Shown: positions 2,737 through 35,795 of the stretch, piece by piece | Layout: every line of letters begins with the position of its first letter | Numbering within the stretch: position 1 is the first letter of the stretch | NCBI GenBank assembly: GCA_965240325.2 | Contig: OZ251231.1 | Span: 682,001-746,000 of the forward strand | DNA from: Rebecca billardiae RCC1528 | Taxonomy: Eukaryota; Protista; Haptophyta | Reading direction: 5' to 3' | Length of the DNA: 64,000 nt | Notes under the pieces: generated by a model | Databases searched by the model: none | What the model saw: the letters and a program-made list of their open reading frames with translations, nothing else | Told to the model about the DNA's origin: nothing | Translations under genes and position numbers: made by a program

Positions 2737-4716
2737 ATGGCGGCGCTGTGCGTGCATGTGATCTTCGTGCTCCTCGCCCAGCTCGAGCAGGGCCCGCCCC
2801 CACGCGGCAGGCGGCTCTGCAGCGTGGGTCATCTGCCACCGCGCTTCACGCCCGAGCCCGTCGAGGCGCCGGGCGCGCTCGATCGCATCGTGCGCGCGCG
2901 CTCGTTCGAACGCGAGCTCGTTCTGCTCGGCACGGATGGCCACTACGTGCACACGGCGGCGGACACGCTGCGCAACCTGCACGCCGTCGGCGTGGCGCAC
3001 GTGATGACGATCGTCCTCCAGCGCAGCTTGTGCGACGAGCTCGTCGCGCTCTTCGCGCCCGCGGGCTGTGCGTGGTCGACACTGTTCGCCTCGGGCGGTT
3101 CGGGTCATTCTACCTCCGGCCAGCTGCTCGGCAAGGGCTCGGGCGTGGCGCGGCGGCACTACCTGCTGCACTTTGCGCTGGAGGCGCGGCTGAACGTGCT
3201 GCAGCTTGATCTCGACACCGTCTTCTTCGACAACCCGTACGTCGCCCTCCACGCGATCATCCCGCCCGGTGGCGGCGGGCTCGCCTGCCACCCGACCTCG
3301 CAGTCCATAGCCAACGGCGGCTTGCTCTATCTCGCAGGGGCGAGCGAGCGCCCGCTGCTCGCGCGGATGATGCGCGAGTACCTAGCTCGGCTCCGCCGTG
3401 CGCTCGATGACCCGATCGCCGAGGCCGGCCGCGTGCTCAGCGTGCTCGGCGAGATGCACCTCGCGGCGGACGTGCTGCGCGCCGCGCCCAACGGCACCGC
3501 TGCCGTTGGTGGCGGCGGCGGCGCTGACGCTGCTAGCGGCGGCGCGGGCGGGGCGGTGATGTTCTCGGCGGAGGAGCGTGAGTTCATCTCGCGCACGATC
3601 GGCGAGTCGATCGGCAACGAGCAGAACACCGCGCACGAGACCATCGTCTCCGCGATCGTGGGCGACTACGGGCGCGGACTCGCACCCAAGTCGCTGCGCG
3701 CCGCATCGATCGCTGTGGCGACGATTGTCAAGGAGGGTAGGCGCAGCAGGGGCAGGGGCGGCAAGGGGATGGGCGAGGCGCGGATCAAGGCGCTACTCGC
3801 GGAGAGCGAGCGCCTGATCCAGCGCTCCGACGCCGTGCAAAGGCGCTGCTCCGCCGCCCTCCGCAAGCGCCACCAGCCGTACGCGCCCGCCGCTCTGGAC
3901 GGCTACCGCCAGCTGGCGTGCGGCGCCCACGGTCTGCGCGAGGAGCTGCTGCGCCGCCGCGACAGGACGGGGTCGTGGTGGGCGCTCGCGCGGCCGGCGG
4001 ACGAGCGCGGCCCGCCGTGCGACCACGGGTGCGGCGTCATCGCGCTGCTGCCGCGCTGGACCTACACGATGAATAACGAGCTGATCGTGGAGCTCAAGAT
4101 GTGCGCACACGTGAACTGCGGCAGGCGCCGCGCGCCCGCGAACGGCAGGCTGCCAGACCGGCGCCGGCTGCTCGCGAAAGGGAGCGGCGATGGCGCGGCC
4201 TGGTGGCCGCTCGTCGCAGCGCACCACCTGGACAAGGACGAGCACCGGCTGCTCCAGGCGCGCGTGCTCGCGCAGCTCCTCCCGCTGCAGTCGCCCGCCG
4301 ACGAGCTGGCCGCTGCGCCGGTGGCCATCGAGCGCGCGCCCGCGCACGTCCGCGCCCGCTTGCACGGCATCAAGAGCGTGAAAGTGCCGCCCGGGCGGCG
4401 GCCGGCGTGGTCGGTGGCCTTCGACGTGTGCGCGAAGCTGCGCGCCCGCGGGTTCAACGGCACGTACCCTGAGAGCGGCGGCCGGCTCGCCAACTACTCG
4501 CCCGGGTTTGTGAAGGACCATCGTGAGAAGTGGGCGGTGCTGTGCGACTCGGGGCCTGCGGCCACAGCGATGGACGACGCCGCGGCCCGTGGCGACGCCA
4601 CCCCGGTGCGCCGCTCGTATGCGCGGATGCGCGTGACGGCAGGCGAGTCGCGTTGGCTGTCGTGCCTGCCGCGCAGGGTCTGCGAGCTCAGGGGTGGACC
4701 CCGTCGGGAGCTATAG
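2737..4716 (+). CDS. Nucleotide-diphospho-sugar transferase (GT77-like), secretory
   Basis: Hydrophobic N-terminus; LNVLQLDLDTVFFDNPY (DxD) followed by ANGGLLYL and a later EQ motif, typical of Nucleotid_trans. Confidence 0.7.
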   Translation: MAALCVHVIFVLLAQLEQGPPPRGRRLCSVGHLPPRFTPEPVEAPGALDRIVRARSFERELVLLGTDGHYVHTAADTLRNLHAVGVAHVMTIVLQRSLCDELVALFAPAGCAWSTLFASGGSGHSTSGQLLGKGSGVARRHYLLHFALEARLNVLQLDLDTVFFDNPYVALHAIIPPGGGGLACHPTSQSIANGGLLYLAGASERPLLARMMREYLARLRRALDDPIAEAGRVLSVLGEMHLAADVLRAAPNGTAAVGGGGGADAASGGAGGAVMFSAEEREFISRTIGESIGNEQNTAHETIVSAIVGDYGRGLAPKSLRAASIAVATIVKEGRRSRGRGGKGMGEARIKALLAESERLIQRSDAVQRRCSAALRKRHQPYAPAALDGYRQLACGAHGLREELLRRRDRTGSWWALARPADERGPPCDHGCGVIALLPRWTYTMNNELIVELKMCAHVNCGRRRAPANGRLPDRRRLLAKGSGDGAAWWPLVAAHHLDKDEHRLLQARVLAQLLPLQSPADELAAAPVAIERAPAHVRARLHGIKSVKVPPGRRPAWSVAFDVCAKLRARGFNGTYPESGGRLANYSPGFVKDHREKWAVLCDSGPAATAMDDAAARGDATPVRRSYARMRVTAGESRWLSCLPRRVCELRGGPRREL

Positions 4717-4854
4717 GCTGACTGCGCTGACGACGCGGACAACTTCAGTCGTCTTCAGACGACTGTACGCCACCAGGACTAGATACTAGATATAGTACAT
4801 AGTATATAGCTAACGCGACCAGGACTATAGCTAGGTACTAGATATAGCATACAT

Positions 4855-4919
4855 GTATATATATATATATATCGAGCCAATATATATATTATCGTGCAGC
4901 TAATAATAGCAACCAGCAG

Positions 4920-6003: not shown

Positions 6004-7969
6004 TCATCGTGGCGCGCCGTCACAGGCCATCGCCACCTGCACGCGAAACTTCAAGTTGCCGGCGGGTGACGCTGCGGCAAGGCGCTTACCTGCGGCTGCG
6101 TCGTGAGCGTCATCAGCAGCAGAATTGTTGTATGCCGCTGCTGCTGGCCCCTCCGCATGATTCGTACCATCACCCGCCGTCGGAAGCATCAAGTGCTGCC
6201 GCGCGTTGAGCTCAGCAGGCAGCTTGCGCAGCACCTTGGACATCAGCTTCAGACACGAAATCCCGCGCCAATGCTTCACGCGGCCGGAGTACACAGTGGT
6301 GCCGACGACGTTGCGATCGGCAGCATCATCGTCAATCTTGTCACCGCGTCCGCTCCTGCGAGCGCTGGCGGTGCTGTTGGGGCCAGCTCGCGGGTGCATC
6401 GCGAAACTTTCGACTGCCTTCAGCATCTGCGCAGCGACCCACCGTCGCGCGGGCTCGGATGGCGGCGACGTAATCACAACGCCACCGTAAACGTTGGCCA
6501 GGCGCGCACGCGCGAGCTGCTGCACCGCACCAGCCGTGCACGCACCAGACCGGCTCACGTTGGTCGCGCAGAACTGCGCATACCAGTCGAACGCGCCGCG
6601 CTTGGCCCTGCAGTGCATCTCAGTGCCGGTCTTGTCCTTGGCGTGGACTCCGCCGGCGCCGCCGCACTGTGTGAACCACGGTGGCGTGGCGATGTACTCG
6701 CGCCACGACGACGACCGCTGGCGCACGGCCAGCGCATCCTGGCGACTGGCAGTCGTCATCTCCGAAGGCGCTGCGTGTTCGTCGGCCAGCTGCTCGAGCA
6801 CAACAGTGCCGGCTTGCGCGCTGTGCGGCGGCCAAAAGAGCATGGAGTTGATGATGCAGTAGTCCGAGATGAAGACTTGCGAGTCGAGCGGTCTGTGTGA
6901 TTTCGCCTCCTCCCACCAGTAGGCGTTGACCCAGTGTGATTCCGCACAGGCCGAGGGCCACATGGCGGCGGGCGTACGGCACGCGCGATCGACGCGCACC
7001 TGCATGCCACCAGGCGCCGAAGCGTTGGGCACCACGGGCCATCGCACGTGCACGAGCTCGCGAGCCGCGTGCGGGGACAGCACGTAGGCGGTCGCAGAGA
7101 CTGCGCAAGCATGCGCGGAGGGCACGCGGGCACGACCGCAGAACGTGAGCGCACGTGCCAGCACAGGTGACAGGCCACAGGGGCGGAGGCGCGGACGTCC
7201 AGTCTGCCTAACTGTCGGCAACTGCCGGCACCGTCATGGTATCGTAAGAGCGCGCGCTGTCTCACGTACATGGCAGTGGGCTGAGGCCGCATGGTTCTCC
7301 GCCTCGTCCACGGGCGAAAAGGTGCACCTTGTCCAGCACGTGCGGTCGGCCAAGCCGCGCCCAGAGCCGCATGAGCGCCGCCCAGTGCTCCGCCTGCGAG
7401 ACCTTGGTCTCGAGCTGCACGATCGACCAATGCTCGGGCTCGAGCGAGCCAACGAGAGCCCGTATCGAGCTGCCGTGTGCACCGTGCACCTCGCCGGGCG
7501 CATTTGCCGGGTCGTTGGCCGCCAGCACGCCCTGGTAGCCGACCAGTGGCGTGAAGGCTACATCGTCTTCCAGAATCAGGTACGCCGGCGCGCTCGGCTC
7601 GGTGGCGAGCGCAGTCCAAGCAGCCCTGAGATGCGACAGCGTGATGGCGTCCTCGACGGTCGGCGCGTGGCCATCAGCCCAGTAAGCGCCACGCGCAATG
7701 CGTGCCACATCCGAGACGAGCACGCCCGGCACGCGGGTCGCGCACACGCCCGGTGCCAGCAGGGCAGGCAGGCGCGCCTGCATCTTGCGACGCCTACGAC
7801 CAGCAGCATCCATGTTGATCCAGAACGTTGGCACGTCGATACACGTAAGACGTCGGGGCGCAGAGGTCGCTTCAGCGCGAAACTTCGGACCGCACACGCG
7901 GTCCGAGACGCGGTGCCGCCCCGAGACTCCGACGGCCACGATGGTCGCAAGGAGTGATGCCGCCACCAT
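6004..7969 (-). CDS. GT25-like glycosyltransferase, probably two exons (intron roughly 7101-7330)
   Basis: Signal peptide MVAASLLATIV; FWINMD..RRRKMQ, ITLSHLRAW and YLILEDD in ORF 7262-7984; AYVLSPHAARELV in ORF 6004-7221 after a gcgcag acceptor near 7101. Confidence 0.7.
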
Positions 7970-8210: not shown

Positions 8211-8223
8211 AGCCAAAGGAATC

Positions 8224-9777
8224 TCATGCTCGGAAGTCCCACAGCGGGACTTCTTCGAGCTTACAGGATCGCCAGTGAAGACCTCCCGCGCCCCTCGAGA
8301 TCATACGGAGTTGGCGGCGAGATCGCGCTCTTGCGGCGGGCGGCGGGCGGGAGCGCGCGCCGGCGCTCGCTCGCGCGCTCGCTGCCCGCAGCGCGCGCGT
8401 CAGGTCGTCGTGAGCGCTTGCGCGCCGGCGCTAGGGCGCGTGCCACCTGCGCACGCCGCTGGTTCGCGCCTGCGCGCTCTGCTCCGCCGCTGCGGCGCTT
8501 GCGAGCGCTCGCCGTGTCTTGCGCCGGCTCCCGGCCCGCCGCGTCGAAAGCCTGGTTGTGCGGCCAGCCAAGTGTGGCGTTTGCGGCTTGGCGCGCGAGC
8601 GCGCGACGCAGCGGATGGCGCGTGTGAGCCGTCCAGCCAGTGTCACTCGCCTCGTGCGCCGCGCGCCGACCGCGCGCCCCAGATTCGACGACGAGCGCTG
8701 CTCGGTCACGGTGAGACGGGAGTCGGCGCTCCGCATCGCAGAGCCGCGTGTGGTCGCGCAGAAGAGGCCGCGCGTGGCCGGCGCGGCCGCTTTGTGCCGT
8801 GGTCTAGGCTTCAATCGCGTCCGCAGTCGGTGAGAACGCATGCCTCGCCCACGAGGTCACTCATCTTCTGCCCGTACACAGCGCGTGACACGTGAGGTGG
8901 ATTCCAGAAGGTGTCTCGAGGTCACGCCGTCACCGATCGTAGCCACATAAGCCATTGCGTGGAAGAGCTGCGCTCACGGAGATCGTGCACGTGTCATCAG
9001 CGCGCTACCAGACCATAACCATCGAGTTCTTGAAGCCGTATACCAATGGAGTAGGATGGCTGGATGGGTTTGTTCGAGCCCACGGCTGGCGGCACGAGTG
9101 ATACGGCCCGGCACGCAGAGTCAGGTCAAGTCGCCCACTCGTGAGTGCGGCGTGACCGCTTGGGCAAGGCAAGCAACTGCGGACGCGATTGAAGCCTAGA
9201 CCACGGCACAAAGCGGCCGCGCCGGCCACGCGCGGCCTCTTCTGCGCGACCACACGCGGCTCTGCGATGCGGAGCGCCGACTCCCGTCTCACCGTGACCG
9301 AGCAGCGCTCGTCGTCGAATCTGGGGCGCGCGGTCGGCGCGCGGCGCACGAGGCGAGTGACGCTGGCTGGACGGCTCACACGCGCCATCCGCTGCGTCGC
9401 GCGCTCGCGCGCCAAGCCGCAAACGCCACACTTGGCTGGCCGCACAACCAGGCTTTCGACGCGGCGGGCCGGAACCGGCGCAAGACACGGCGAGCGCTCG
9501 CAAGCGCCGCAGCGGCGGAGCAGAGCGCGCAGGCGCGAACCAGCGGCGTGCGCAGGTGGCACGCGCCCTAGCGCCGGTGCGCAAGCGCTCACGACGACCT
9601 GACGCGCGCGCTGCGGGCAGCGAGCGCGCGAGCGAGCGCCGGCGCGCGCTCCCGCCCGCCGCCGCCGCAAGAGCGCGATCTCGCCGCCAACTCCGTATGA
9701 TCTCGAGGGGCGCGGGAGGTTTTCACTGGCGATCCTGTAAGCTCGGAGAAGTCCCGCTGTGGGACTTCCGAGCATGA
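8224..9777. mobile_element. Non-autonomous foldback DNA transposon, ~600-bp TIRs, 4-bp TSD AATC
   Basis: Arms 8224-8827 and 9176-9777 are reverse complements with few differences; ends TCATGCTCGG...CCGAGCATGA; AATC at 8220-8223 and 9778-9781. Confidence 0.85.
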
Positions 9778-9901
9778 AATCAAGGGCTGGAGCCTGGACA
9801 GCTAGAGGTTTCGGCCGCATTCCTCCGAAGCGAAACCGGATGACGTCAGCCCCTGAGGCTGCTGAGAAGACTTTTCGAAGCCGCGGCGCGGTGAGCTGGC
9901 G

Positions 9902-23099: not shown

Positions 23100-24109
23100 A
23101 GTTTTCCCTGAGCGCCGGGCGGCGGCAGCGGCGAGGGCGAGTACTCCGCTGGCGGGGCGCGCACGGGGCACAGCGCTGCGGGCGCGGATGTGCCCGCAGA
23201 GCCGGCGCGCGCGGACGGGCTGTTGCGGGAGAGTACTCGGCGCCCTCCTGCGCCGCGCGTCTTGCGCCACGCCTCTTTCGCCTCGGCTCAGGGCAGCGCG
23301 CACATTCGCGCCGCGTCAACGGGCCAGCCTTGCCTGCGCCGCAGCCGACCGCGCGCGCGCCGTGCGCGGCGTGGTCGGGAAGGAACGGGCGCTGCCGCGG
23401 GGCGAGGTGGCGACACCATGCGCGCACGCCATGCCGCCCCGCCACGCCTTGACGAGCGTGTCGTCGGTCCGTTTGCATGCCTCTTTGACTTGTCACAAAT
23501 GGTGTGCACGGCCGTGCGGTCGTGTCACTCGTGACCCTTGTCGGGACGATCATTGAGACGCAGAACAGTGCCAGACGGGCGCGCGGGCTACTCTTACATG
23601 GATATTCATCACCGTGTGGTCAAGTAGAGGTGCTGGATGCGACGCTTTCCTCGCGCTGATGCTCTTTCATCATCTTCTTCGAGCTCAGGTCCGTGGCCGT
23701 TGGCACGACAAGTGATCAGCACTCGTCAACAGCTGTGCAGATCTATTTCCGTGCCCTTTCGCGGCATCACGGGGCGGCATGGCGTGCGCGCATGGTGTCG
23801 CCACCTCGCCCCGCGGCAGCGCCCGTTCCTTCCCGACCACGCCGCGCACGGCGCGCGCGCGGTCGGCTGCGGCGCAGGCAAGGCTGGCCTTGACGCGGCG
23901 CGAATGTGCGCGCTGCCCTGAGCCGAGGCGAAAGAGGCGTGGCGCAAGACGCGCGGCGCAGGAGGGCGCCGAGTACTCTCCCGCAACAGCCCGTCCGCGC
24001 GCGCCGGCTCTGCGGGCACATCCGCGCCCGCAGCGCTGTGCCCCGTGCGCGCCCCGCCAGCGGAGTACTCGCCCTCGCCGCTGCCGCCGCCCGGCGCTCA
24101 GGGAAAACT
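23100..24109. mobile_element. Foldback element, ~340-bp TIRs, possible CAA target duplication
   Basis: Arms 23100-23441 and 23770-24109 are near-perfect reverse complements (AGTTTTCCCTGAGC...GCTCAGGGAAAACT); CAA lies on both flanks. Confidence 0.75.
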
Positions 24110-27200: not shown

Positions 27201-30200
27201 CCGCGGCCGGCCCTGCCGCCTGCCCCGCGCACACGCGCTTCTATCTTGTCGTCCGCGCGCCGCTCGCAACCGCGCGCGCGCTTCTGCGAAGCGCAGGGTT
27301 GGAGCACCTGGCTCGGAGCTCGCTGCGCGAGGCGCTGGCCGAGCCCGACGCCGAGCGCGGCGCAGGGCTGGCTGCTCGCGGCGGCGAGGCCGCTCGCGCT
27401 GGCGAGGCTGCTCGCGAGGCCGTGTGGCGCGCCATCCTCCTCCGCTCCGCAGGCTACTCCGGTTACTCCGGTTTCTCCGAGACGGTGTCGCGCGCGCGCG
27501 CTGCGCGCACTCGGCTGCCCTCTGCCGTCCCCGCAGCGAGCGAGCGCAACCGCTCGGCACAGCCCGGTACGCCCAGCGGGAGCGGCAGCGGCGGCACGGT
27601 CATTGGCCAGCTGCTCTCACTCTGGGCACGCTTCGCAGGGCATGAGTACGCCGCTGCTCGGCGCGTCGCCGAGCGCGCCGCGGCCGACGCTGCGGCCGAC
27701 GCGCCGCGCGCGCGCACGGCGGCGCGGGCCTATCAGACAGATGGCGACGGCGGCGCGGCTGGCGCAGGCAGCGCGCGGCGCATACGGCTGGGCGCGATAC
27801 GGTACGAGGACTTTGTGCGCGACCCTCTGCGCGCAGCCGGCGCGCTGCTCGAGGAGCTCGGGCTCACGACGAGCGCGCACATGCGCGAGCTCGAGCGCTC
27901 GGAGCACGGCTCGGCCGTGCGAGCGTTTGCCCAGACGCGCTGGCAGCGCCGAGCGCGCGCGCCGGCGGCCACAGCCGCCGTGTGCGCCGGCGTCGGCGAC
28001 GGCGTCGGCGGCGGCGCGTGCTTCGAGCGCGCGCAGTGCGCGGCGGCGCTCGAGCTGCCCGCCGTGCGCCGCGCGGCTGCGCTGTGGGGCTACGAGCTGC
28101 ACGCCCGCAACTGCACCGAGCGCGCTCTCACCGGGAGCTGGCGCGGTCCCTTATCGGCGGCTCGGCTGCGGCTGACAGCGAGCCCGCCGCCGCCGGCCTC
28201 GCCGCCGCCAGCGCCGCCGGCTCCGCCGCCGCCCGCGCTGGGCTTCACGCCCCTCCGGTTCGCGTGCCCGCCGCCCGCCGCCGCCGCTCTCGCCGCCTCC
28301 GCGCGCCCGAGCCTCGCGGTGCTCACAGTTGTCAGCAGCTCGCGCGCGGCTCACGTCGCCGAGCTCGCGGCGCATTACATGGAGGAGGGCGCGGCGCATC
28401 TGTTCGTGGTGGACACCTCCGGGCCGTGGCAGCGCGGCGTGCGGGACGCGGTGGCGGCGCTGCCTCGCGGCTGGGCGACGCGCCTGCCCGCCGCGACGCT
28501 GCTCGGCGGGCGCGACGCCGCCGCCTCCGGCAGCGGCGCGCCCTCAGCTGGCACAGACGCGCTCACAGGCGAGCTGATAGCGACGACGCTGCTTCGCAAT
28601 CGTCACGCGCGCGCCGACGATGGCGGCGGCGGCGGCGGCGCGTGGCAGGCGCACCGCTACGACGCGCGCGTGCAGCGCAGGCTGCTCAACCGCGCGCTCG
28701 GCGTCGCGCGGCGCACGCCGCCGCCCGGCGCCGCGCCTGACGGCCGCTTCGAGTGGGTGCTTCCGATCGACTCCGACGAATACGTCACGTCGCGAGGGTG
28801 TGCGGGCACGCCTCTGGCCGATCTGCTCGGGGGGCCTCTGCGCACGTGCGCGCTCGTGTATCTGCCGTGGCTGGCGTTCTCGTGGGGCGGGCACGAGGCC
28901 GAGCCGTGCGGCGCGGAGCGTGACGCGGCGGAGTGGCGCTGGGCGCTGCGCGCGGCGGAGGCCGCGCGGCCGCGCGACGGTGAGATCGTTTCGCTCGACA
29001 GCGCGGCGGCGCGCGCGTCGGCCAGCGCCGGCCTTCTCAAGGACAAGTTCGCGCCCAAGCTGTCGGGGCTGAGCAAGTACGCGGTGCGGATGGACGCGGT
29101 GCTCGCGCTCGACCTGCACAGGCCGAGGCGCATGGCGCCGCACGCGGGCGGCGGGCAGCACGCGAGCTGCCTGATGGTCGGGCCAGCGGCGGAGCAGCGC
29201 AGCGCGCGCGGCCCTCCGACCGCCGATGGCGGCGGCGCGGACGCCGACGCGGATGCCGACGCAGACGCGGACGCGGACGCCGACGCCGACGCCGGCGCGG
29301 ACGAGGGTGGGCACGGCTCGAGGGCGCAGTGGCCGACGGCGTGGCGCATCGAGCACCCCTGGCCGCACGCGCACGCCGCGGCGCTCAACGTCTCCCTCAG
29401 CGAGGCGGCGGTGCCTGGACTCGTCCTCGCCAGCCACCACATGCGCGTGAGCTCGTGGGCGCAGTGGCGGGTCAAGACCGAGCCAGACCGCTACTACGCG
29501 GTCTGGTACGATCGGTTCACGGATGACGACGCGGCAGTCGACGCGGTGGCGAACCGGCGCGACGTGCACGACAGCTTCCTGCGCGATGTGCGCTCGCCGC
29601 GCGTGCGGCCGCGCGCGCGGCCCGCCACCGCGCGCCCGCCCGCCGCCAGCCAGCTGCACGCGGCGCACACGTGCGAGCCGGCTGGCGGCGCCGCCGCCGC
29701 GCCGGTCGGCGCCGCTGCCGCTGGGGCGGCGCGCGCGCCGGGCTGGCGGAGCTCGCTCCTCCGACAACCCTCCGTGTGCGCGGCCGCCGTCGCTTCGAGC
29801 ACGGCCCCAGCGACGGCCGTCGCTTCGAGCACGGCCCCAGCGACGGCCTCTGCGCGCGAGGCGGCACGCGCGCTCCGGCCAGCGCTCAAGCTGAGCCGTA
29901 TCCGCGGCGCGCCGGTGCGCGTGCTGAGCGCGGGCCTCGACGGCGCCGGATCGAGCGCGCTGTTCCTCGCGCTGTGCGCCGCGGGCGTGCCGAGCGTGCG
30001 CGGCGCCGAGGCGTGCCACGCTGGGCCTGAGGCGCTGCGCCGGCACCTGGCCCTGCTGGAGCTCTGGGACGAGCTCAGCGCGTGCGCGCGCTGCGCTGCG
30101 GCGCGCCGCGCGCGAGCTGGCGCCAGTACCGCTGACGCGGGCGCCTATGCTGGCGGATGCAACGGCACGGTGGGCCGGAGGGTGCTCGGGCTCGCAGCCG

Positions 30201-30979
30201 CGCCGCGCACGCTCGCGTGCGAGCGCCACGACTGGCTGCGTCGGCTGCACGCAGCCCTGCGCGCCGTCGTCCTCTCTGGCATCCACGCACTCCTCGATTC
30301 GCCCTACCCAGAGCTGCTGCCAGAGCTGCGCGCGCTCGCGCCGCGCGCGATCGTCGCTCACGCCGTGCGCGCGCCCAGTGAGTGGGCGCGGCGGCTCGTG
30401 CCGCACTCGCCGCCCGAGCTCGTCTGCAGGCGGCAGCGCGACACGCTCGCGCGCGCGCGCGGCGGCCGGCGCTCGCCGTGGCACATCGTCGCGTGCGTCG
30501 TGGCGGGCAAGGCGGGCGCACTTGGGGCAAGCTTCGCGCCGTGGCGCTTCGGGCGGCGCCCGCGAGCCGAGCCGCAAGCGCACGTTGGCGGCGCGGGCCT
30601 GGCAGCACGCGCACGACCAGAGCCGCTCGGGCTGCACGTGGCCGCGACCTCTGACGCGCTTGACGAGCAGGCGCTCGCACGCGCGTACGCGACGCACGGG
30701 CACCTCGTGCGCACGGCCATCCTCGCGCAGCACGCCCACGCGGCTGGCTCGAGGGCGGTGGCACACGGATACTGGGAGCTGTGCACACGCGACGGCAACA
30801 AGGCGCGGTACGAGCGAATGCGCGCGCAAGCCCTGGCGGGCATGGACGAGGCCTCAGGCTTGAGTCCACAGGTGGTGGGAGGCGTGAGCCTAGCCGCCAA
30901 CGTGTCGTGCGCCGGCATGGAGCTCTTCCTCCACGTGGCGGCCGAAGCGAGCTCGGCATACTTCCAATGCGAGCGATGA
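24212..30979 (+). CDS. Giant multidomain glycan-synthesis protein: Gal-3-O-sulfotransferase + GT64 (EXTL-like) + sulfotransferase + GT2/GT92-like + Sulfotransfer_4-like
   Basis: Signal peptide MRGRALLWLLAC at ATG 24212; FAKTHKTASSTV..IVREP; NSLNNRY..IVDDD..HCDDLLLNY; GVGLQKGGTT..VRAP..RYEDF; EWVLPIDSDEY; RVLSAGLDGAGSSAL..LLDSPY, all in one open frame. Confidence 0.8.
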   Translation: MRGRALLWLLACAAWLAARVHAPSAPAKAPDASPERDPGPLGGADSFLLSASQRAALTAPLPPVIFAKTHKTASSTVLNILHRAADLRNLSVMLPRVASAGGPRGAPALSALGWPHAFPGSGFEPPSHQFDVILYHAVLDASRMRAYARVVPPPRRALIVTIVREPVAAAESAFAFFEARRCCGADVPEHLRWLEGLRAVRSVAEATFRNPQAHDLGWYARHNGSTARDGDARAVREWLRAEIEAEIDLVLLTERLEDGLLVLREALGGPAALALEELAHIRLKARAVKPRALSATPDARARLLRANSVDAALHAHFAAAFERRWAQAPARVHREREALSQLLARLERACARAPAWSRQLRSASRRGGAHDASLAGARAAPPICGHERWVWIAPGAPDAAVDSARVRSHARLPPAGAAARPPPADSGTRGAPVCPLAVRTDEWPYRQHLLSRALARRELEPVHLGGAARRERVGSASEHTRACAYARPPTMAMARSGADAAVGAASLPSALNESALPPFTALLLGYDGARLRLNALRVLGELRAHRACVRALLVWNGGVAELRAALAAAGSSEPQLRAGAPGDAPLELIVEPRNSLNNRYMHGARVPTPVCVIVDDDLRPQFARELASAVLAHWAAHREQLVGVSARVVRPPGGYVPVSRARDVREANALLPHVLAVPKALLSAYSAPANAAERAWVDADAAHCDDLLLNYVQHARRGASEHARAALLAAPEHLILDLSLGGGISGGRGDNRTRERAACAAHLHARLRPGGPLPPVELVGVAWSFVAAMLPRELGFMRRVARAAGAPAVVRRHYADGARAPERVRGTPELTPSSDADGLGAPCASCPDLLGVGLQKGGTTAVLATLGATLDALRARGVAREGAREGAREGAAPAVIAQNDIPQTWRWWARGRVDRQDAASVCAALATVPSRDPRRLIPLQRATPPDGASRGGGAAAHEDGAAATATASDPSGSFARGAPLVLAKEASLTPYARTLLAAAGPAACPAHTRFYLVVRAPLATARALLRSAGLEHLARSSLREALAEPDAERGAGLAARGGEAARAGEAAREAVWRAILLRSAGYSGYSGFSETVSRARAARTRLPSAVPAASERNRSAQPGTPSGSGSGGTVIGQLLSLWARFAGHEYAAARRVAERAAADAAADAPRARTAARAYQTDGDGGAAGAGSARRIRLGAIRYEDFVRDPLRAAGALLEELGLTTSAHMRELERSEHGSAVRAFAQTRWQRRARAPAATAAVCAGVGDGVGGGACFERAQCAAALELPAVRRAAALWGYELHARNCTERALTGSWRGPLSAARLRLTASPPPPASPPPAPPAPPPPALGFTPLRFACPPPAAAALAASARPSLAVLTVVSSSRAAHVAELAAHYMEEGAAHLFVVDTSGPWQRGVRDAVAALPRGWATRLPAATLLGGRDAAASGSGAPSAGTDALTGELIATTLLRNRHARADDGGGGGGAWQAHRYDARVQRRLLNRALGVARRTPPPGAAPDGRFEWVLPIDSDEYVTSRGCAGTPLADLLGGPLRTCALVYLPWLAFSWGGHEAEPCGAERDAAEWRWALRAAEAARPRDGEIVSLDSAAARASASAGLLKDKFAPKLSGLSKYAVRMDAVLALDLHRPRRMAPHAGGGQHASCLMVGPAAEQRSARGPPTADGGGADADADADADADADADADAGADEGGHGSRAQWPTAWRIEHPWPHAHAAALNVSLSEAAVPGLVLASHHMRVSSWAQWRVKTEPDRYYAVWYDRFTDDDAAVDAVANRRDVHDSFLRDVRSPRVRPRARPATARPPAASQLHAAHTCEPAGGAAAAPVGAAAAGAARAPGWRSSLLRQPSVCAAAVASSTAPATAVASSTAPATASAREAARALRPALKLSRIRGAPVRVLSAGLDGAGSSALFLALCAAGVPSVRGAEACHAGPEALRRHLALLELWDELSACARCAAARRARAGASTADAGAYAGGCNGTVGRRVLGLAAAPRTLACERHDWLRRLHAALRAVVLSGIHALLDSPYPELLPELRALAPRAIVAHAVRAPSEWARRLVPHSPPELVCRRQRDTLARARGGRRSPWHIVACVVAGKAGALGASFAPWRFGRRPRAEPQAHVGGAGLAARARPEPLGLHVAATSDALDEQALARAYATHGHLVRTAILAQHAHAAGSRAVAHGYWELCTRDGNKARYERMRAQALAGMDEASGLSPQVVGGVSLAANVSCAGMELFLHVAAEASSAYFQCER

Positions 30980-31585: not shown

Positions 31586-32695
31586 ATGCGCGGTCATGCT
31601 CTGGCTCTGCTTGGGTTCGTGGGCGTGGCAGTGGCAGAAGTCGCCCTTCCGGACCTTGCACCACCGGTGGTACCCCGCAGCATGCAGCTCGACGACGAGC
31701 TCCCAACCACGCACGTGGACGACGCACTGCCAGCGTCCCTTCCGCTCAACATCGACTTGACTGCCGAGGTGCTTGCGGCGGAGGCCATGCAGGAGTCGCG
31801 CAGGCTGCAGGTGTATACGGGAAGCAAGCCGCCAAATCCGTTCCCCAAGGAAGTGCGGCGGTATGGTTGCGCCACTATTGACGGCAGCGACGCGATGTGG
31901 CTCTACTTCAGGGTGGAGTTGGCCGAGCCCGGGTGCCCGGATGGGTGCACCGAAGGGACCCGACTTGTACATGCGCTGCACAGGCAGCTCGATCCGTCGT
32001 ACACGAATGCGGAGCATGAACATTTGTTTCGATGCAGCACGAACTTGCAGCCGATCATTGGCTACAAGTTCGCTGGGTACCCACCAATGTCATGGTGGTT
32101 CGGCTCGTATGATGCTAAGGGCGGGCAACGCTTCCGCTTCCCCTGGAGCAGGTGCAACTTGTCCCCATCCCACCCCGCTGTCTTCCGCTATCGGATCTTC
32201 AAGTCCAAGGAGGCTGAGATCCGTCAGAACCTGGCCAATCTCAAGCTGGACAAGGAGCGCTTCGTGTGTCGGGCGTTCTGCTGTGATGCAGACGTCACGA
32301 TCACTGAGCTTGTGGCTGGCTGCATGGACCAAGCTGCACAGAACTGGGACAGCTCAGCCACATTCCAGCCGTACCGTGCATGTGACTACTCGCTGTCGCC
32401 CACGCTCGGCCAAGAAGCCAACCGCGCCAGCCCGCTCGCCCCTGGACTGGACTGGGCGCCGCACAGCCTGGCCTTGATTATCGCTGGTGTGGCCCTGGTG
32501 TGTGCACAGCTAGTCTGCTTGGTGTTGGTTGCGTGCTACAAGTTCTCTCCGACCATTCGCCGCCGTTATGCTCAGTACAAGATGACCCGCCAGCCGCCTC
32601 ACGAGGTCAGCGAGGTCGACGAAGCACCAGCGCCTGCCCGCCCGGCGCAGCAGAAGGCCAAGGGCGGCCGAGCCTCTGCGCACGCCATCGCATGA
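31586..32695 (+). CDS. Type I membrane protein with a Cys-containing ectodomain
   Basis: Signal peptide MRGHALALLGFVGVAVA; GCMDQAAQNWDSSAT..ACDY motif; C-terminal TM segment followed by a basic tail. Confidence 0.75.
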   Translation: MRGHALALLGFVGVAVAEVALPDLAPPVVPRSMQLDDELPTTHVDDALPASLPLNIDLTAEVLAAEAMQESRRLQVYTGSKPPNPFPKEVRRYGCATIDGSDAMWLYFRVELAEPGCPDGCTEGTRLVHALHRQLDPSYTNAEHEHLFRCSTNLQPIIGYKFAGYPPMSWWFGSYDAKGGQRFRFPWSRCNLSPSHPAVFRYRIFKSKEAEIRQNLANLKLDKERFVCRAFCCDADVTITELVAGCMDQAAQNWDSSATFQPYRACDYSLSPTLGQEANRASPLAPGLDWAPHSLALIIAGVALVCAQLVCLVLVACYKFSPTIRRRYAQYKMTRQPPHEVSEVDEAPAPARPAQQKAKGGRASAHAIA

Positions 32696-33122: not shown

Positions 33123-34487
33123 TTAGTTAGTACTTAGTACTTGGGCGGTCTGCTTGAGCGCCCCACGTGTGCCGTCGTCGGCCAGCAGCACCTCTGCGCG
33201 CAGCCGCGCCGGCGGCCCCGCAAATGGCGTCGTGTGCATCGGCTGGGTGCCATCCTCGTGCAGCAATGCCGTCAGGTGGGCGGCGTGAGGTTGATAGAAT
33301 GTGTTGAGCTCTGCCTCGATGCGCGGCCCGAAGGGCGTGCGCTGCCCCTGAGTCGTCCGGTTGGCCGCTGCGATCGTGCCGTTCGGCTCGCCACATGCAC
33401 CAGAGGCCCAGGTCATTTCTGAGCCGATGAAGGCCGCAAGATCGCGCAGGGTGCGCTCAGGCGCGGCGAGGTAGCCGACAAAGGAGACGAGCGAGACCTG
33501 GTCTGGCGCGAACGCACCAAGCAGAGCGCGCAGCTGGGGCGCATACACTCCCGCAGCGATCGGGCTGTGCCGGCCGCCACACGAAGTGTTGTAGAGCGCG
33601 TCGGCACCCGCCAGGTTGAGCCCCCGTGCCGTCGCGCATGCACGCGTCGCGTTCAGCCATTCCGCAGCCCACGCGTCCAGCCCCTCCTGACCCTGAGCCG
33701 CGTGGGCAGTGGACTCGGGGGCGTCGCCAAAGGTGGGGCCATGCAGCTTGCCCTTGCGCCACCACATGTCGTACACTGAGCGCAGCCGCGAGACTGGGTT
33801 GCGTACGATCGCCACAAGCCGTACGCGCGAGAGCGGAGACGGCATGCCTGGCTCCGGTCCTATTGGCAGAGCCGCATATAGCTCTCTCGCGCGCGCCGGG
33901 AAATTTGGATCGCGCATGTAGTTCGGCGTGGCGTCGATCGCCAGGCTGGGAGCGCTGCGCTGCGGTGGCTGCACGCGCCCGTGTGCGCTTTGAGTTTGGC
34001 GACAAGCGCCACCTCTCTCCGCTTCGGCAGGCCCCGCCTCTGCGGCTGCCGTCCGCTCGCTCAGCTCGCAGCGGGGGAATAGGTGCGCATACTCGCGCGC
34101 GTGCCTCGCAGTAAAGCGACGCTCGCGGTCAAAGAAGTGCACCTCCTTGCGATGCCCGTGAGCCCTGCGCGCCCTCGAGCCCCCGTGGGCGTGGGCGCCA
34201 CGAGCACTCGGCGCATGCCCCATGGCTGGCGCAACGCCGTCAATGTGCGTGATGATGTCGGTCCACAGCGACGACGTGGCGCATTTTTGGCAGCCTACCA
34301 GTAGGAGTGTCGGCAGCATGAACCCGTCGATGCACAAAGGGTGCCAGGTGTGCGTGGGACCAGTTCTAGTAGCGACGACAGCGCTGGACGGCATGTTGCC
34401 AGCCTGCCACCCCAGCTGGCGGGGGGCCGCGGCGGCGCGACGGCCGACGGGCCCCCCGCTCCAAACAAGCAAAATGGCGGCCGCCAA
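33123..34487 (-). CDS. Heparan-sulfate 3-O/N-sulfotransferase-like PAPS sulfotransferase (start uncertain; first in-frame ATG at 34394)
   Basis: LLVGCQKCATSSL (5'-PSB), KEVHFFD, DATPNY, IVRNPVSRLRS (3'-PB). Confidence 0.8.
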   Translation of the reverse strand: MAAAILLVWSGGPVGRRAAAAPRQLGWQAGNMPSSAVVATRTGPTHTWHPLCIDGFMLPTLLLVGCQKCATSSLWTDIITHIDGVAPAMGHAPSARGAHAHGGSRARRAHGHRKEVHFFDRERRFTARHAREYAHLFPRCELSERTAAAEAGPAEAERGGACRQTQSAHGRVQPPQRSAPSLAIDATPNYMRDPNFPARARELYAALPIGPEPGMPSPLSRVRLVAIVRNPVSRLRSVYDMWWRKGKLHGPTFGDAPESTAHAAQGQEGLDAWAAEWLNATRACATARGLNLAGADALYNTSCGGRHSPIAAGVYAPQLRALLGAFAPDQVSLVSFVGYLAAPERTLRDLAAFIGSEMTWASGACGEPNGTIAAANRTTQGQRTPFGPRIEAELNTFYQPHAAHLTALLHEDGTQPMHTTPFAGPPARLRAEVLLADDGTRGALKQTAQVLSTN

Positions 34488-34505
34488 GATGAAGGGTGAG
34501 CGCCC

Positions 34506-35795
34506 ATGAGGTCGTCACGTTCGGCAGTCGCCGCTGTGGTATGGGCAACTCTCGCAGCCAGCCGTGCTAGGGGAGAGCATACACCGGGCGCGTCCCCGTG
34601 CGTAGGAGGGCGCCTACTTCCGACCGTCCTCATTGTTGGTGCGCAGAAGTGTGGCACGAGCTCACTCAAGCGCGACCTGCTCATGCACGCGCGCGGTGTC
34701 ATGGTCCCCCTCACTTCAAAGCTCAAACACAAGAGCTGCGGCCGGGCTGACTGCGACTTTCATCGGTTTCGGCCGCGGCTGCTCCAGCGCGAGCTCCACT
34801 TCTTGGACAACGGCACGGGTGAGCTCAGTCGTGGCGCAGTTGGGTACGCATCGTACTACCCACTGTGTCCGGCGGATGGGCAGCCGCAGTTCGCACTTGA
34901 CAAGACGCCAAACTACATGCGACATGTGGGCTTTTCCGCCGCGGCGGCAGCGCTGTACGGCCGTGTCCCGGCCGTCGGGCTCGAAGCTACGCTCGATCGC
35001 GTCCGGCTAATCGTCTCTGTGCGCCATCCTGTCCAGCGCCTCCGCTCATTCTATGACATGCGAACATTCCGTGACAGGCGAATGCGGACCAAGCCGAGCG
35101 GGGGAGGCGATGCAGGCGCGTCGGTGCGCAATTTTGAGCTGAGCGAGTGGGCAATCGCGCTCCTCAATGCTACCATGCGATGCGCCGCTTCGCACGCCCT
35201 CGACGTGTCCGGACCCCTCGGGCTGCATGGCTCGGAGTGCGCCGCGCGCCGCGGGCCCGGACGAGAGCTCGAGACGGGCATCTATGCCCCTCAGCTGCGC
35301 GAGATGCTGGCGTCATTCCCCGCTCGGCAGCTGGCTCTGGTCTCCTTTGCGGGGTACGTGTGCGCCCCGCAGCGCACGGTGTGTGACCTTGCGCGCTTCA
35401 TCGGCAGCAGCGCACCGGCGCTGGGCAGTGCCTGCGGAGATGGCCCTTCCACCGGCGCTCGTGCCGTCACACCCCCGCCTGCGCACGCCGAGCGCACCGG
35501 GCAGGGGAGCGACATGCCCCTTGGGCGCGAAAATGCGTCCTCCTTCGCCGCGGCGAACCCTGCTCGAAGGCGACACGCGTTCGGCGCTGCAGCTCGCACC
35601 GCGCTTGACGCATTCTACAAGCCACATGCCGCCCACCTGACGGCACTGCTGCGCGAGGATGGCACCCAGCCGATGCTCACGACGCCATTTGCGGGGCCGC
35701 CGGCGCGGCTGCGCGCAGAGGTGCTGCTGGCCGACGACGGCGCAGCTGAAGCCATGGCGGAAGCGTGTAGCAGCATCAGAGCGCGGCTGCAATAA
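34506..35795 (+). CDS. Heparan-sulfate 3-O/N-sulfotransferase-like PAPS sulfotransferase
   Basis: Signal-like N-terminus; IVGAQKCGTSSL, RELHFLD, DKTPNY, VRHPVQRLRS. Confidence 0.85.
   Translation: MRSSRSAVAAVVWATLAASRARGEHTPGASPCVGGRLLPTVLIVGAQKCGTSSLKRDLLMHARGVMVPLTSKLKHKSCGRADCDFHRFRPRLLQRELHFLDNGTGELSRGAVGYASYYPLCPADGQPQFALDKTPNYMRHVGFSAAAAALYGRVPAVGLEATLDRVRLIVSVRHPVQRLRSFYDMRTFRDRRMRTKPSGGGDAGASVRNFELSEWAIALLNATMRCAASHALDVSGPLGLHGSECAARRGPGRELETGIYAPQLREMLASFPARQLALVSFAGYVCAPQRTVCDLARFIGSSAPALGSACGDGPSTGARAVTPPPAHAERTGQGSDMPLGRENASSFAAANPARRRHAFGAAARTALDAFYKPHAAHLTALLREDGTQPMLTTPFAGPPARLRAEVLLADDGAAEAMAEACSSIRARLQ

What the first reader, a model, noticed from the sequence alone, without database searches (positions are those of the whole stretch)
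2737..35795. Candidate eukaryotic sulfated-glycan biosynthetic gene cluster
Seen: seven of the eight recognisable intact genes in ~33 kb carry glycan-active motifs, and most have signal or anchor sequences. They are GT77-like, GT25-like, GT91/GH130-like propeller, methyltransferase-GT25, a five-domain sulfotransferase/GT protein and two HS-type sulfotransferases. The eighth is a type I membrane protein, and a pyruvyltransferase lies 17 kb further on. Known: these families build, sulfate, methylate and pyruvylate Golgi glycans, and such genes are usually dispersed in eukaryotes. Inference: a clustered pathway for a sulfated, methylated extracellular polysaccharide, sitting in a transposon-rich accessory region.
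Basis: partly seen in the sequence, partly recalled or inferred. Interest (0 to 1): 0.8.

Follow-up and report, generated by a model that had tools for sequence, protein, structure and literature searches.

The report
Algal sulfated-glycan enzyme gene cluster
In a GC-rich, haptophyte-like alga, seven of eight neighbouring genes in 33 kb encode secretory-pathway enzymes that build, sulfate or methylate sugar chains. This density is far above the genome's background, but it has not been shown that the genes work as one pathway.

Summary
Window 2.7-35.8 kb holds eight codon-bias-supported genes, and seven look like secretory-pathway glycan enzymes.

**Support by gene**
- Strong: the 2,255-aa g5, with Gal-3-O-sulfotransferase and GT64 domains, a GT2_4/GT92-like domain inferred through paralogs, and two weak sulfotransferase-like modules.
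- Strong: g4 (SAM methyltransferase plus a GT25-like GT-A fold, Z 14.7 to COLGALT1), the g7/g8 sulfotransferase pair, and the pyruvyltransferase at 52 kb.
- Moderate: g1 (GT77-like) and g2 (GT25-like).
- Lead only: g3 (GH130/GT91-like).

**Chance test**
Each family has only 5-40 loci in 72 Mb. Outside the window, about 100 loci give 5 inter-family pairs within 35 kb, against 5.0 expected. The window carries seven family labels, against a maximum of 3 in 2,000 simulations. Neighbours of paralogs elsewhere, and the window's right half, are ordinary genes. The physical cluster is real and exceptional.

**Still open**
A single co-regulated pathway is untested. No RNA run was listed, no relatives were found for synteny, and the promoters share no motif. 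Foldback elements fill 21% of the interval and abut g3, g5 and the pyruvyltransferase, so TE-driven accretion is a serious rival. First readers noted similar glycan islands elsewhere in this genome.

The parts
2737..4716 (+). g1: 659-aa protein with an N-terminal hydrophobic segment and a GT77-like nucleotide-diphospho-sugar transferase domain (about aa 40-230, DxD at D158/D160). The C-terminal 400 aa have no recognised domain.
   Evidence: GC3 0.89. Own PF03407 E 0.039. 10 paralog loci. 4 of 7 paralogs hit PF03407, best 2.3e-5. Invariant residues.
6007..7969 (-). g2: GT25-like glycosyltransferase with a signal anchor, probably two exons. Exon 1 runs from 7969 down to about 7265-7340; exon 2 runs from about 7100-7222 down to 6007.
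   Evidence: Codon-position GC. Pfam GT25 E 0.34 at the EDD motif. ESM Atlas gives 92/100 best hits in GT25 clusters, recognition 3054. Several GT-AG introns of 58-211 nt give a 585-635 aa product. Splicing was not verified by RNA.
8221..9780 (.). Foldback element 1 (nested perfect or near-perfect inverted arms). It ends about 120 bp upstream of the g3 ATG.
   Evidence: Inverted repeats I1, I3 and I6.
9902..11929 (+). g3: 675-aa secreted protein of a lineage-restricted family, possibly a GH130/GT91-like beta-propeller. Its family is unproven.
   Evidence: GC3 0.91. 5 loci in the genome, including a 95.7% identical copy on C15. ESM lead to GH130/BMT at 0.90-0.92. No Pfam or PDB hits. AF2 pLDDT 40.
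14034..17489 (+). g4: type II-anchored three-part protein. It has a class I SAM methyltransferase (ORF aa 250-335), a GT25-like GT-A glycosyltransferase domain (ORF aa about 480-740) and a third conserved domain (aa about 800-1093). The ORF is open from 13929.
   Evidence: Pfam Methyltransf_23 3e-6. PDB UbiG-type MT 1e-4. AF2 pLDDT 73.5. Foldseek COLGALT1 E 1.3e-6. VIA Z 14.7. Paralogs.
17537..21815 (.). Degenerate 4.3-kb palindromic (foldback-like) repeat without a convincing gene. Pieces of it recur on C15.
   Evidence: Inverted pairs I7-I11, I13 and I14. The ORFs show no coding signal. Repeats shared with C15.
23100..24109 (.). Foldback element with 100% complementary 220-nt arms plus 127-nt inner arms. 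It ends about 100 bp upstream of the g5 ATG.
   Evidence: I2/I3 and I2, I5.
24212..30979 (+). g5: 2,255-aa single-ORF secreted multi-enzyme. In window DNA coordinates the domains are Gal-3-O-sulfotransferase (about 24344-25264), GT64 (about 25820-26353, DDD motif), a sulfotransferase-like module (GGTT P-loop motif; Sulfotransfer_3 hit at about 27722-27871), a GT2_4/GT92-like GT-A (about 28592-29599) and a Sulfotransfer_4-like module (about 30263-30391).
   Evidence: No protein with the same architecture among 740 hits.
31586..32695 (+). g6: type I membrane protein (signal peptide, Cys-rich ectodomain, one C-terminal TM). It has no enzyme signature and could be a carrier or substrate.
   Evidence: Translation. 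No Pfam hit.
33123..34397 (-). g7: HS-type (Sulfotransfer_1 superfamily) sulfotransferase, head-to-head with g8. The first ATG leaves no signal peptide, and the ORF is open to 34487.
   Evidence: PSB motifs in the translation. PF00685 E 0.011. About 15 paralog loci, several above the PF00685 cut-off.
34506..35795 (+). g8: HS-type sulfotransferase with a signal peptide. It is a paralog of g7 (44-64% aa identity), and the 3' ends are homogenised (142-nt inverted repeat, 92%).
   Evidence: PDB 3rnl 1.3e-4; HS 3-OST-3A 0.01; I4.
52358..53743 (+). Polysaccharide pyruvyltransferase with a signal anchor, 16.5 kb beyond the cluster and just downstream of foldback element 2 (49092-51794). An 87% paralog lies head-to-head with the g3 copy on C15.
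   Evidence: PF04230 5e-12. 14 loci genome-wide. C15 comparison.

Best explanation
This is a genuine, statistically exceptional physical cluster of eight genes in a haptophyte-like alga. Seven encode Golgi or secretory-pathway enzymes of different families: GT77-like, two GT25-like, GT64, GT2_4/GT92-like, a Gal-3-O-sulfotransferase, HS-type sulfotransferases, a SAM methyltransferase and a possible GH130/GT91-like enzyme. The eighth is a type I membrane protein.

The most likely working model is inferred, not shown. The enzymes act in the same compartment on the same class of secreted or cell-surface glycan. The GT domains extend a Gal/HexNAc-containing chain. The 2,255-aa g5 couples chain extension to sulfation on one polypeptide, much as animal EXT, NDST and chondroitin synthases couple steps. 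g7/g8 add further sulfate esters and g4 adds O-methyl groups. The nearby pyruvyltransferase may add ketal pyruvate. Co-location in one chromatin neighbourhood would allow joint regulation.

The cluster was assembled piecemeal by relocation and duplication of single, mostly intronless genes, probably helped by the foldback elements that abut g3, g5 and the pyruvyltransferase. It did not arise by block duplication or bacterial transfer.
For: Shown:
- The domain assignments above rest.
- Family sizes are modest: Sulfotransfer_1 about 31 loci plus 8 g7-type, Gal3ST 10, GT64 5, g1 family 10, g3 family 5, g4 family 16, pyruvyltransferase 14, g5 domain-4 family 13.
- Outside the window these about 100 loci give 5 inter-family pairs within 35 kb against 4.97 expected. 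The window has 7 family labels in 35 kb, against a maximum of 3 in 2,000 random placements.
- With a generous 2-5% glycan-gene background, the genome-wide expectation of such a run is 1.6e-7 to 9e-5 (6 of 7 neighbours). It is 8e-4 to 8e-2 under the harshest treatment, with g3 dropped and g7/g8 merged.
- Of the 19 neighbour ORFs of paralogs elsewhere that were not chosen for a known sulfotransferase, none has a glycan-enzyme Pfam hit. They include RRM, PIN, SNF transporter, prenyltransferase, ion channel and CXXC proteins.
- The right half of the same window is housekeeping: POP1, Aladin-like WD40, L21, Ank, EsV-1-7.
- Two independent recurrences of the same pairings exist elsewhere. A sulfotransferase lies next to a GT64-GT4 gene on C23 (0.026 such pairs expected). 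A pyruvyltransferase lies head-to-head with a g3 paralog on C15 (0.003 expected).
- Gal3ST and GT64 are eukaryotic families, with 0 of 14 bacterial controls matching. Codon-position GC matches the host.
Against: - There is no expression data, because no RNA run was listed.
- No orthologous locus in another species was recovered, so conserved linkage is untested.
- No 11-mer is shared by three or more of the upstream regions.
- The one conspicuous shared 26-nt motif is a generic repeat with about 1,272 genomic copies.
- There are no nucleotide-sugar synthesis, transporter or PAPS-supply genes in the cluster.
- g3's family and g5 domains 3 and 5 are weakly supported.
- g7 lacks a signal peptide from its first ATG.
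- 21% of the interval is foldback DNA, and g3 has a 95.7% copy elsewhere. This fits turnover-driven accretion as well as selection for linkage.
Confidence: 0.45

Rival explanations
1. The genes are co-located but share no pathway. On this view the interval is a TE-rich, fast-evolving compartment in which single-gene duplicates of rapidly diversifying surface-glycan decoration families accumulate. Accumulation could come from foldback or TIR-element-mediated capture or relocation, or from relaxed constraint on insertion. The genes would then serve different glycans and be regulated independently.
For: - Three foldback structures make up 21% of the interval. They sit directly upstream of g3 and g5, and a fourth sits upstream of the pyruvyltransferase.
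- g3 is a recent single-gene duplicate: 95.7% identity over 2.2 kb, with homology ending at the gene's edges.
- g4 has 74-75% paralogs elsewhere.
- g7/g8 are an inverted duplicate pair with homogenised 3' ends.
- No shared promoter motif was found.
- Unverified first-reader notes describe other TE-embedded islands of glycan-decorating genes in this genome.
Against: - The same families show no excess inter-family proximity anywhere else (5 pairs observed, 5.0 expected). A general sink for these families would produce more such islands.
- Immediate neighbours of 19 paralogs elsewhere are ordinary genes.
- The cluster members are mostly old, divergent paralogs (30-45% to their nearest relatives), not a pile of recent copies.
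- The same pairings recur elsewhere: sulfotransferase with GT64, and pyruvyltransferase with g3.
Confidence: 0.38
2. The run of glycan genes is a chance coincidence in a genome rich in glycosyltransferases and sulfotransferases.
For: - The genome has many glycan-related genes: 28-29 first-reader notes mention glycosyltransferases or sulfotransferases.
- Under the harshest assumptions (5% of all genes are glycan genes, g3 dropped, g7/g8 merged), the genome-wide expectation of such a run rises to 0.08.
Against: - The random-placement simulation never exceeded 3 family labels per 35 kb, against 7 observed.
- Realistic backgrounds give expectations of 1e-7 to 6e-3.
- Empirical neighbours of paralogs are not glycan genes.
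Confidence: 0.04
3. The cluster is a remnant of an integrated giant-virus (Nucleocytoviricota) glycosylation gene island.
For: - ESM-Atlas nearest clusters for g2 and g3 include many Nucleocytoviricota proteins.
- The g4 GT domain resembles Mimivirus R655 (Z 13.5).
- An EsV-1-7 repeat protein lies 10 kb downstream.
- From my own knowledge, giant viruses carry clustered glycan genes.
Against: - No viral hallmark gene (capsid, PolB, packaging ATPase, primase) appears in any Pfam scan of the window.
- Codon-position GC is host-like.
- Every member has multiple dispersed host paralogs.
- The IMG/VR scan for g3 relatives was blank.
- EsV-1-7 repeats are also ordinary cellular genes in several algal groups (my own knowledge).
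Confidence: 0.03

Closest known systems
Bacterial sulfated exopolysaccharide gene clusters, such as the cyanobacterial synechan xss cluster (PMC8205485; seen)
   Same: Non-homologous glycosyltransferases and sulfotransferases are physically clustered with decorating enzymes, and are presumed to build one sulfated extracellular glycan.
   Different: Those are prokaryotic operon-type clusters with Wzx/Wzy or ABC export and dedicated regulators. Here the genes are monocistronic and eukaryotic, with signal anchors, Golgi-type families (Gal3ST, GT64, GT25, GT77) and no export genes. Gal3ST and GT64 matched none of 14 bacterial control genomes.
Animal glycosaminoglycan machinery (EXT1/2 GT47-GT64, NDST, HS 3-OST, chondroitin synthases)
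   Same: It shares the GT64 domain and HS-3-OST-like sulfotransferases. It also shares the principle of fusing successive steps in one Golgi polypeptide, as g5 does here. The genome's other GT64 genes are GT64-GT4 fusions.
   Different: The animal genes are dispersed and their fusions have two domains. g5 strings five modules in a sulfotransferase-GT-sulfotransferase-GT-sulfotransferase order, and no protein with that architecture was found among 740 hits. There is no evidence that the product is heparan-like.
Eukaryotic metabolic gene clusters of fungi and plants (secondary-metabolite BGCs; my own knowledge)
   Same: Non-homologous genes of one presumed pathway are clustered in a TE-rich, dynamic region, and were assembled by relocation and duplication.
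   Different: Those clusters make small molecules, usually with a signature scaffold enzyme and often a cluster-specific regulator, and their co-expression is documented. Here the presumed product is a polymer, there is no regulator, and co-expression is untested.
Giant-virus glycosylation gene clusters (Mimivirus, chloroviruses; my own knowledge, plus PDB hits 9crz and 2p6w)
   Same: Several GT-A glycosyltransferases, including GT25-like ones, are clustered with sugar-modifying enzymes in a eukaryote-associated genome.
   Different: There are no viral core genes, the codon usage is host-like, and every member has host paralogs.

Membership tests
Gal-3-O-sulfotransferase (PF06990), g5 domain 1 | Sequence match above Pfam's curated cut-off over most of the domain | tested here: met
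   111.8 bits against a cut-off of 27, profile positions 61-339 of 402. It is the best of 10 loci in the genome.
GT64 (PF09258), g5 domain 2 | Match above the curated cut-off, and an acidic DxD-type motif | tested here: met
   30-34 bits against a cut-off of 21.3. A DDD motif is readable in the translation. The match is partial, covering profile positions 17-180 of 245.
Sulfotransfer_1/3 superfamily (HS-type), g7 and g8 | Match above the curated cut-off | tested here: not met
   g7 scores 15.5 bits on PF00685 (cut-off 22). g8 scores 19.3 bits on PF13469 (cut-off 27).
Sulfotransfer_1/3 superfamily (HS-type), g7 and g8 | 5'-PSB (K-x-x-T-S/T) and 3'-PB (R-x-P-x-x-R-x-x-S) PAPS-binding motifs, and homology to members that do pass the cut-off | tested here: met
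   Both motifs are readable. g7 matches paralogs on C34, C22, C23 and C3 at 1e-10 to 1e-21, and these pass PF00685. PDB hits are 3rnl at 1.3e-4 and HS 3-OST-3A at 0.01.
GT25 (PF01755), g2 | Match above the curated cut-off | tested here: not met
   11.2 bits against a cut-off of 24. The ESM-Atlas feature search gives 92 of 100 best hits in GT25 clusters. This amounts to family resemblance, not proven membership.
GT25, g4 domain 2 | Sequence match to PF01755 | tested here: not met
   No Pfam hit in g4 or in 8 paralogs.
GT25, g4 domain 2 | GT-A fold closest to a solved GT25 catalytic domain, with an acidic metal-binding motif | tested here: met
   The model has pLDDT 73.5. COLGALT1 is the top match, with Foldseek E 1.3e-6 and VIA Z 14.7, rmsd 3.4 A over 196 aa. 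E130 and D132 are invariant in the EED motif.
GT77 / Nucleotid_trans (PF03407), g1 | Match above the curated cut-off, and a DxD motif | tested here: inconclusive
   g1's own match is 14.4 bits against a cut-off of 22. Four of 7 paralogs match at E<=0.01, best 2.3e-5. D158 and D160 are invariant.
GH130 / GT91 (BMT) beta-propeller, g3 | Sequence or fold match to PF04041 or PF12141 | tested here: inconclusive
   No Pfam hit at E<=5 in 4 paralogs, and no PDB hit. The AF2 model is unusable. The only support is ESM feature similarity of 0.90-0.92 with recognition below threshold.
GT2_4 / GT92 GT-A, g5 domain 4 | Match to PF13704 or PF01697 | tested here: inconclusive
   g5's own match is E 0.021, below the cut-off. 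Seven of 7 paralogs hit PF13704, two of them above the cut-off (55.7 and 48.6 bits), and these two also hit GT92.
Polysaccharide pyruvyltransferase (PF04230) | Match above the curated cut-off | tested here: met
   46.7 bits against a cut-off of 25.3, though only the C-terminal 70 profile positions match.
Biosynthetic gene cluster (functional sense) | Physical clustering of non-homologous genes beyond chance | tested here: met
Biosynthetic gene cluster (functional sense) | Co-expression or co-regulation of members | not testable with these tools
   No RNA run was listed. No shared upstream 11-mer was found.
Biosynthetic gene cluster (functional sense) | Conserved linkage in related species | tested here: inconclusive
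   No relatives with usable context were found. Only within-genome recurrences of two pairings are known.
Biosynthetic gene cluster (functional sense) | Members contribute to one product | not testable with these tools
   This needs genetics and glycan chemistry.

The most novel reading that the evidence does not exclude
A eukaryotic alga keeps a true biosynthetic gene cluster for a sulfated, methylated and possibly pyruvylated extracellular or scale-associated polysaccharide. The cluster is centred on a five-module 'assembly-line' Golgi enzyme that alternates sulfotransferase and glycosyltransferase domains, and its members are co-regulated as a unit. As far as my searches show, this would be the first glycan BGC described in a eukaryote, and it would give direct genetic access to algal sulfated-polysaccharide synthesis.
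Probability: 0.3. Interest if true: 0.85.

Novelty: new variant of a known kind. Interest (0 to 1): 0.55.

Why it matters
Sulfated algal polysaccharides matter for marine carbon export, virus and grazer interactions, and as biomaterials. Almost none of their biosynthetic genes are assigned, partly because eukaryotic glycan genes are normally dispersed and give no guilt-by-association signal.

A real cluster would nominate a complete candidate enzyme set for one polymer: chain-building glycosyltransferases, three kinds of sulfotransferase, a methyltransferase and a nearby pyruvyltransferase. It would also nominate a five-module enzyme that may couple polymerisation to sulfation. That would make the pathway testable with a few knock-outs.

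If the cluster instead reflects TE-driven accretion, it documents a 'two-speed' compartment for surface-glycan genes in a haptophyte-like genome. That is of interest for host-virus arms races.

Tried and rejected
**Homology searches**
- The search for homologous proteins on g5 (whole), g3 (whole) and g3 (residues 335-640) all returned nothing. In each, the 8,000 candidates sharing most words were scored and none passed. I suspect Ala/Arg-rich words dominated the candidates, so these blanks say little.
- A full HMMER search with g5 residues 1-1200 found 740 proteins. All matched on the Gal3ST domain at 45% identity or less, and none had the same architecture. The top hits come from short Logan contigs. 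The two contexts I looked up showed no glycan neighbours.

**Structure**
- AF2 on g3 with 4 paralogs gave pLDDT 40 and was not used for fold search.

**Expression and synteny**
- Exact-product look-ups of g3 and g8 are not on record.
- Metagenome and IMG/VR scans for g3 and for the g4 domain were blank. One alignment was too divergent to seed a scan.

- Two 'own genome' searches with the g5 C-terminal 1,458 aa failed technically but were counted. As a result g2 and g6 paralogs were never counted.

**Regulatory motifs**
- I rejected a cluster-specific regulatory motif. No 11-mer is shared by three or more upstream regions. The 26-nt motif near g1/g2, g6 and the pyruvyltransferase has about 1,272 genomic copies.

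**Origin of the cluster**
- I rejected block duplication as the origin. The C15 region shares only g3, a pyruvyltransferase and TE fragments with the window, and is otherwise ordinary.
- g2 and the g4 GT domain are not detectably related to each other beyond the EDD motif.
- I rejected bacterial transfer, because the families are eukaryotic.

Full report
**Setting.** The window is C14:682001-746000 of a 72-Mb, 41-contig genome with about 70% GC. It is eukaryotic: the window encodes POP1, an EsV-1-7 repeat protein, ankyrin and Aladin-like WD40 proteins, and an organellar-type L21. Earlier follow-up notes of this scan call the organism haptophyte-like. My only independent hint is that the nearest ESM-Atlas cluster of g3 is mostly haptophyte. 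Random ORFs are long at this GC content, so I accepted a gene only if GC3 > GC1 > GC2.

**Gene inventory of 2.7-35.8 kb.** Eight genes pass the codon-position test:
- g1, 2737-4716 (+)
- g2, 6007-7969 (-), two ORFs joined by a short intron
- g3, 9902-11929 (+)
- g4, 14034-17489 (+)
- g5, 24212-30979 (+)
- g6, 31586-32695 (+)
- g7, 33123-34397 (-)
- g8, 34506-35795 (+)

Coding sequence fills 60% of the interval. The gaps hold foldback elements at 8221-9780 and 23100-24109, and a degenerate 4.3-kb palindrome at 17537-21815. Together these make up 21% of the interval. The ORFs at 17.5-23.9 kb and 12.2-13.8 kb show no convincing coding signal or domain.

**What each gene is.**
- **g5** is the anchor of the cluster. 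It has Gal-3-O-sulfotransferase (E 5e-32) and GT64 (E 4e-7) domains.
  - A third module has a GGTT P-loop-type motif and a Sulfotransfer_3 hit at 2e-4.
  - A fourth module's own hit to Glyco_tranf_2_4 is weak (0.02). However, its 7 sampled genomic paralogs all hit PF13704, up to 7e-15, and two also hit GT92.
  - A fifth module has only a marginal Sulfotransfer_4 hit at 0.07.
- **g4** has a class I SAM methyltransferase (Pfam 3e-6; PDB UbiG 1e-4). A second domain has no Pfam hit, even among 8 paralogs. Its AF2 model (pLDDT 73.5) is closest to the GT25 catalytic domain of human COLGALT1. Foldseek gives E 1.3e-6, and VIA gives Z 14.7 with rmsd 3.4 A over 196 residues. Mimivirus R655 and bacterial beta-1,4-galactosyltransferases come next.
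- **g2** has the GT25 opening and EDD motifs, a sub-threshold Pfam GT25 hit, and 92 of 100 best ESM-Atlas hits in GT25 clusters. Several GT-AG introns of 58-211 nt join its two ORFs into a 585-635 aa product.
- **g1** is GT77-like by transitivity. Its own E is 0.039, but 4 of 7 paralogs hit PF03407, and the DxD aspartates are invariant.
- **g7 and g8** carry both PAPS-binding motifs. Their direct hits are weak, including HS 3-O-sulfotransferase. Their paralogs pass the Sulfotransfer_1 cut-off.
- **g6** is a signal-peptide plus single-TM protein without an enzyme signature.
- **g3** remains open. It has no Pfam or PDB sequence hit even with paralogs, and its model failed. An ESM-Atlas lead to GH130/BMT clusters has recognition below the tool's own threshold.
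- **The pyruvyltransferase** at 52.3-53.7 kb is confirmed.

Six-frame searches of the whole genome give modest family sizes:

| Family | Loci in the genome |
|---|---|
| Sulfotransfer_1 | about 31 |
| g7-type sulfotransferases (additional) | 8 |
| Gal3ST | 10 |
| GT64 | 5 |
| g1 family | 10 |
| g3 family | 5 |
| g4 family | 16 |
| Pyruvyltransferase | 14 |
| g5 domain-4 family | 13 |

- I pooled the 112 loci. Outside the window they give 5 inter-family pairs within 35 kb, against 4.97 expected under random placement. So these families are normally dispersed, apart from tandem duplicates.
- The window carries 7 family labels in 35 kb, while 2,000 simulations never exceeded 3.
- The families were chosen from the window, so I also computed an ascertainment-free bound. 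If 2-5% of about 18,000 genes were glycan genes, the expected number of runs with 6 of 7 neighbours is 1.6e-7 to 9e-5. With g3 dropped and g7/g8 merged it is 8e-4 to 8e-2.
- As an empirical control I scanned 20 ORFs lying next to paralogs of g1, g4 and g5 domain 4 elsewhere in the genome. Ten have unrelated domains (RRM/WW, lectin-like, esterase, CFAP95, PIN/HHH, SNF transporter, prenyltransferase, ion channel, CXXC and a marginal FAZ1 hit). Nine have none. Only the one I had picked knowingly is a sulfotransferase.
- The right half of the same window is housekeeping.

The physical cluster is therefore real and unusual for this genome.

**How it arose.** It did not arise by block duplication.
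- g3 has a 95.7% identical single-gene copy on C15. The homology ends at the gene's edges.
- On C15 that copy sits head-to-head with an 87% paralog of the window's pyruvyltransferase. The remaining 60 kb there is ordinary or transposon DNA: EF-hand, Wbp11, NOB1, copia-type RT and Ulp1.
- g4 has 74-75% paralogs on C14 and C3.
- g1 and the g5 domains are only 30-45% identical to their nearest relatives.
- g7 and g8 are an inverted pair whose 3' ends are homogenised (142 nt at 92%).

So the members have different ages and came together piecemeal. Foldback elements lie immediately 5' of g3, g5 and the pyruvyltransferase. This suggests either promoter-targeted insertion or a role in moving genes.

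**Evidence bearing on function.** Two pairings seen in the window recur independently elsewhere.
- A Sulfotransfer_1 gene lies next to a GT64-GT4 fusion gene on C23. About 0.026 such pairs are expected by chance.
- A pyruvyltransferase lies next to a g3 paralog on C15. About 0.003 are expected.

These recurrences favour functional coupling of these activities. Against a tight regulon, no 11-mer is shared by three or more upstream regions. The conspicuous 26-nt motif found four times in the window is a generic repeat with about 1,272 copies. Expression could not be examined, because no RNA run was listed for the stretch. Synteny could not be examined either. Word-indexed protein searches were blank. 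The exhaustive HMMER search found only Gal3ST-domain relatives at 45% identity or less, on short contigs. Contig scans were blank.

**Most likely mechanism (inferred).** All members except possibly g7 start with a hydrophobic signal or anchor (read by eye). They would therefore meet in the Golgi or secretory lumen. From established knowledge of these families, the GT-A domains (GT64, GT25-like, GT2_4/GT92-like, GT77-like) typically transfer HexNAc, Gal/Glc, Gal and Ara/Xyl respectively. Gal3ST sulfates O-3 of galactose. The HS-type enzymes sulfate hexosamine or uronate hydroxyls. The SAM methyltransferase and the pyruvyltransferase add O-methyl and ketal pyruvate.

A galactose-rich, sulfated, methylated heteroglycan on a secreted polymer or glycoprotein is a reasonable product. 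g6 could be a carrier. g5 would couple extension and sulfation on one chain.

My confidence is about 0.9 that the physical cluster of glycan enzymes is real. It is about 0.45 that the genes serve a common pathway, about 0.38 for TE-driven co-location without a shared pathway, and a few percent each for chance and for a viral remnant.

**Comparison with known systems.** Clustered GT plus sulfotransferase genes for a sulfated exopolysaccharide are known in bacteria, such as synechan xss (PMC8205485). My literature searches found no eukaryotic counterpart. The enzyme families are those of the animal glycosaminoglycan machinery, which is dispersed in the genome. In organisation the locus resembles fungal and plant metabolic clusters. 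I therefore rate it a new variant of a known kind, if it proves functional. First readers of this scan flagged further glycan islands and multi-domain 'assembly-line' proteins elsewhere in the same genome (unverified). That makes the phenomenon more interesting at the genome level, and it also strengthens the TE-compartment rival.

Noticed in passing
window 5408-5433, 5609-5634, 31177-31202, 52316-52341 (all +): An identical 26-nt motif (GCCTGCCTGAGCTGTGTGCGTCTCTT) occurs 4 times in the window and about 1,272 times genome-wide (663 forward, 609 reverse; 0 for the reversed control). The listed copies are perfect. It looks like the conserved end of a very abundant short dispersed element. One copy sits about 40 nt upstream of the pyruvyltransferase ATG.
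   Followed up: partly
window 23100-24109: A third foldback element with 100% complementary 220-nt arms plus 127-nt inner arms. It ends about 100 bp before the g5 start codon, and the long upstream ORF extension of g5 (23906-24211) runs into its arm. Foldbacks also sit directly 5' of g3 (8221-9780) and of the pyruvyltransferase (49092-51794).
   Followed up: partly
window 17537-21815: A degenerate (80-90%) nested palindrome of about 4.3 kb with no convincing gene. Fragments of it recur at 78-93% identity on C15 about 8-11 kb from the g3 paralog.
   Followed up: partly
L003:8684 to L004:2470 (C15:1115684-1119470): A pyruvyltransferase paralog (87% nt identity to the window's) lies head-to-head, about 450 bp apart, with a 95.7% identical copy of g3. 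A further, more divergent pyruvyltransferase-like ORF (64% nt) lies 4 kb downstream.
   Followed up: partly
L025:2728-7267 (C23:1297728-1302267); L035:3080-5860; L036:2525-5461: The genome's other GT64 genes are GT64 plus GT4 (Glycos_transf_1) two-domain fusions of 926-1,037 aa. One of them lies directly beside a Sulfotransfer_1 gene. This could be an EXT-like bifunctional polymerase with its own sulfotransferase.
   Followed up: partly
window 45284-46837: Twelve tandem 114-nt (38-aa) units encode an EsV-1-7 cysteine-rich repeat protein (Pfam E 5e-160).
   Followed up: no
window 58819-60923: A 99-100% identical tandem duplication with a period of about 1.09 kb. Its units also match C15 at 76-88%, so it is probably a repeat element.
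   Followed up: no
L004:9593 to L006:5293 (C15:1126593-1142293): Two giant ORFs on C15. One is a 2,218-aa copia-type polyprotein (RVT_2). The other is a 2,711-aa ORF with weak Ulp1 protease and DUF6570 hits, and may be a Helitron-like or other large element.
   Followed up: no
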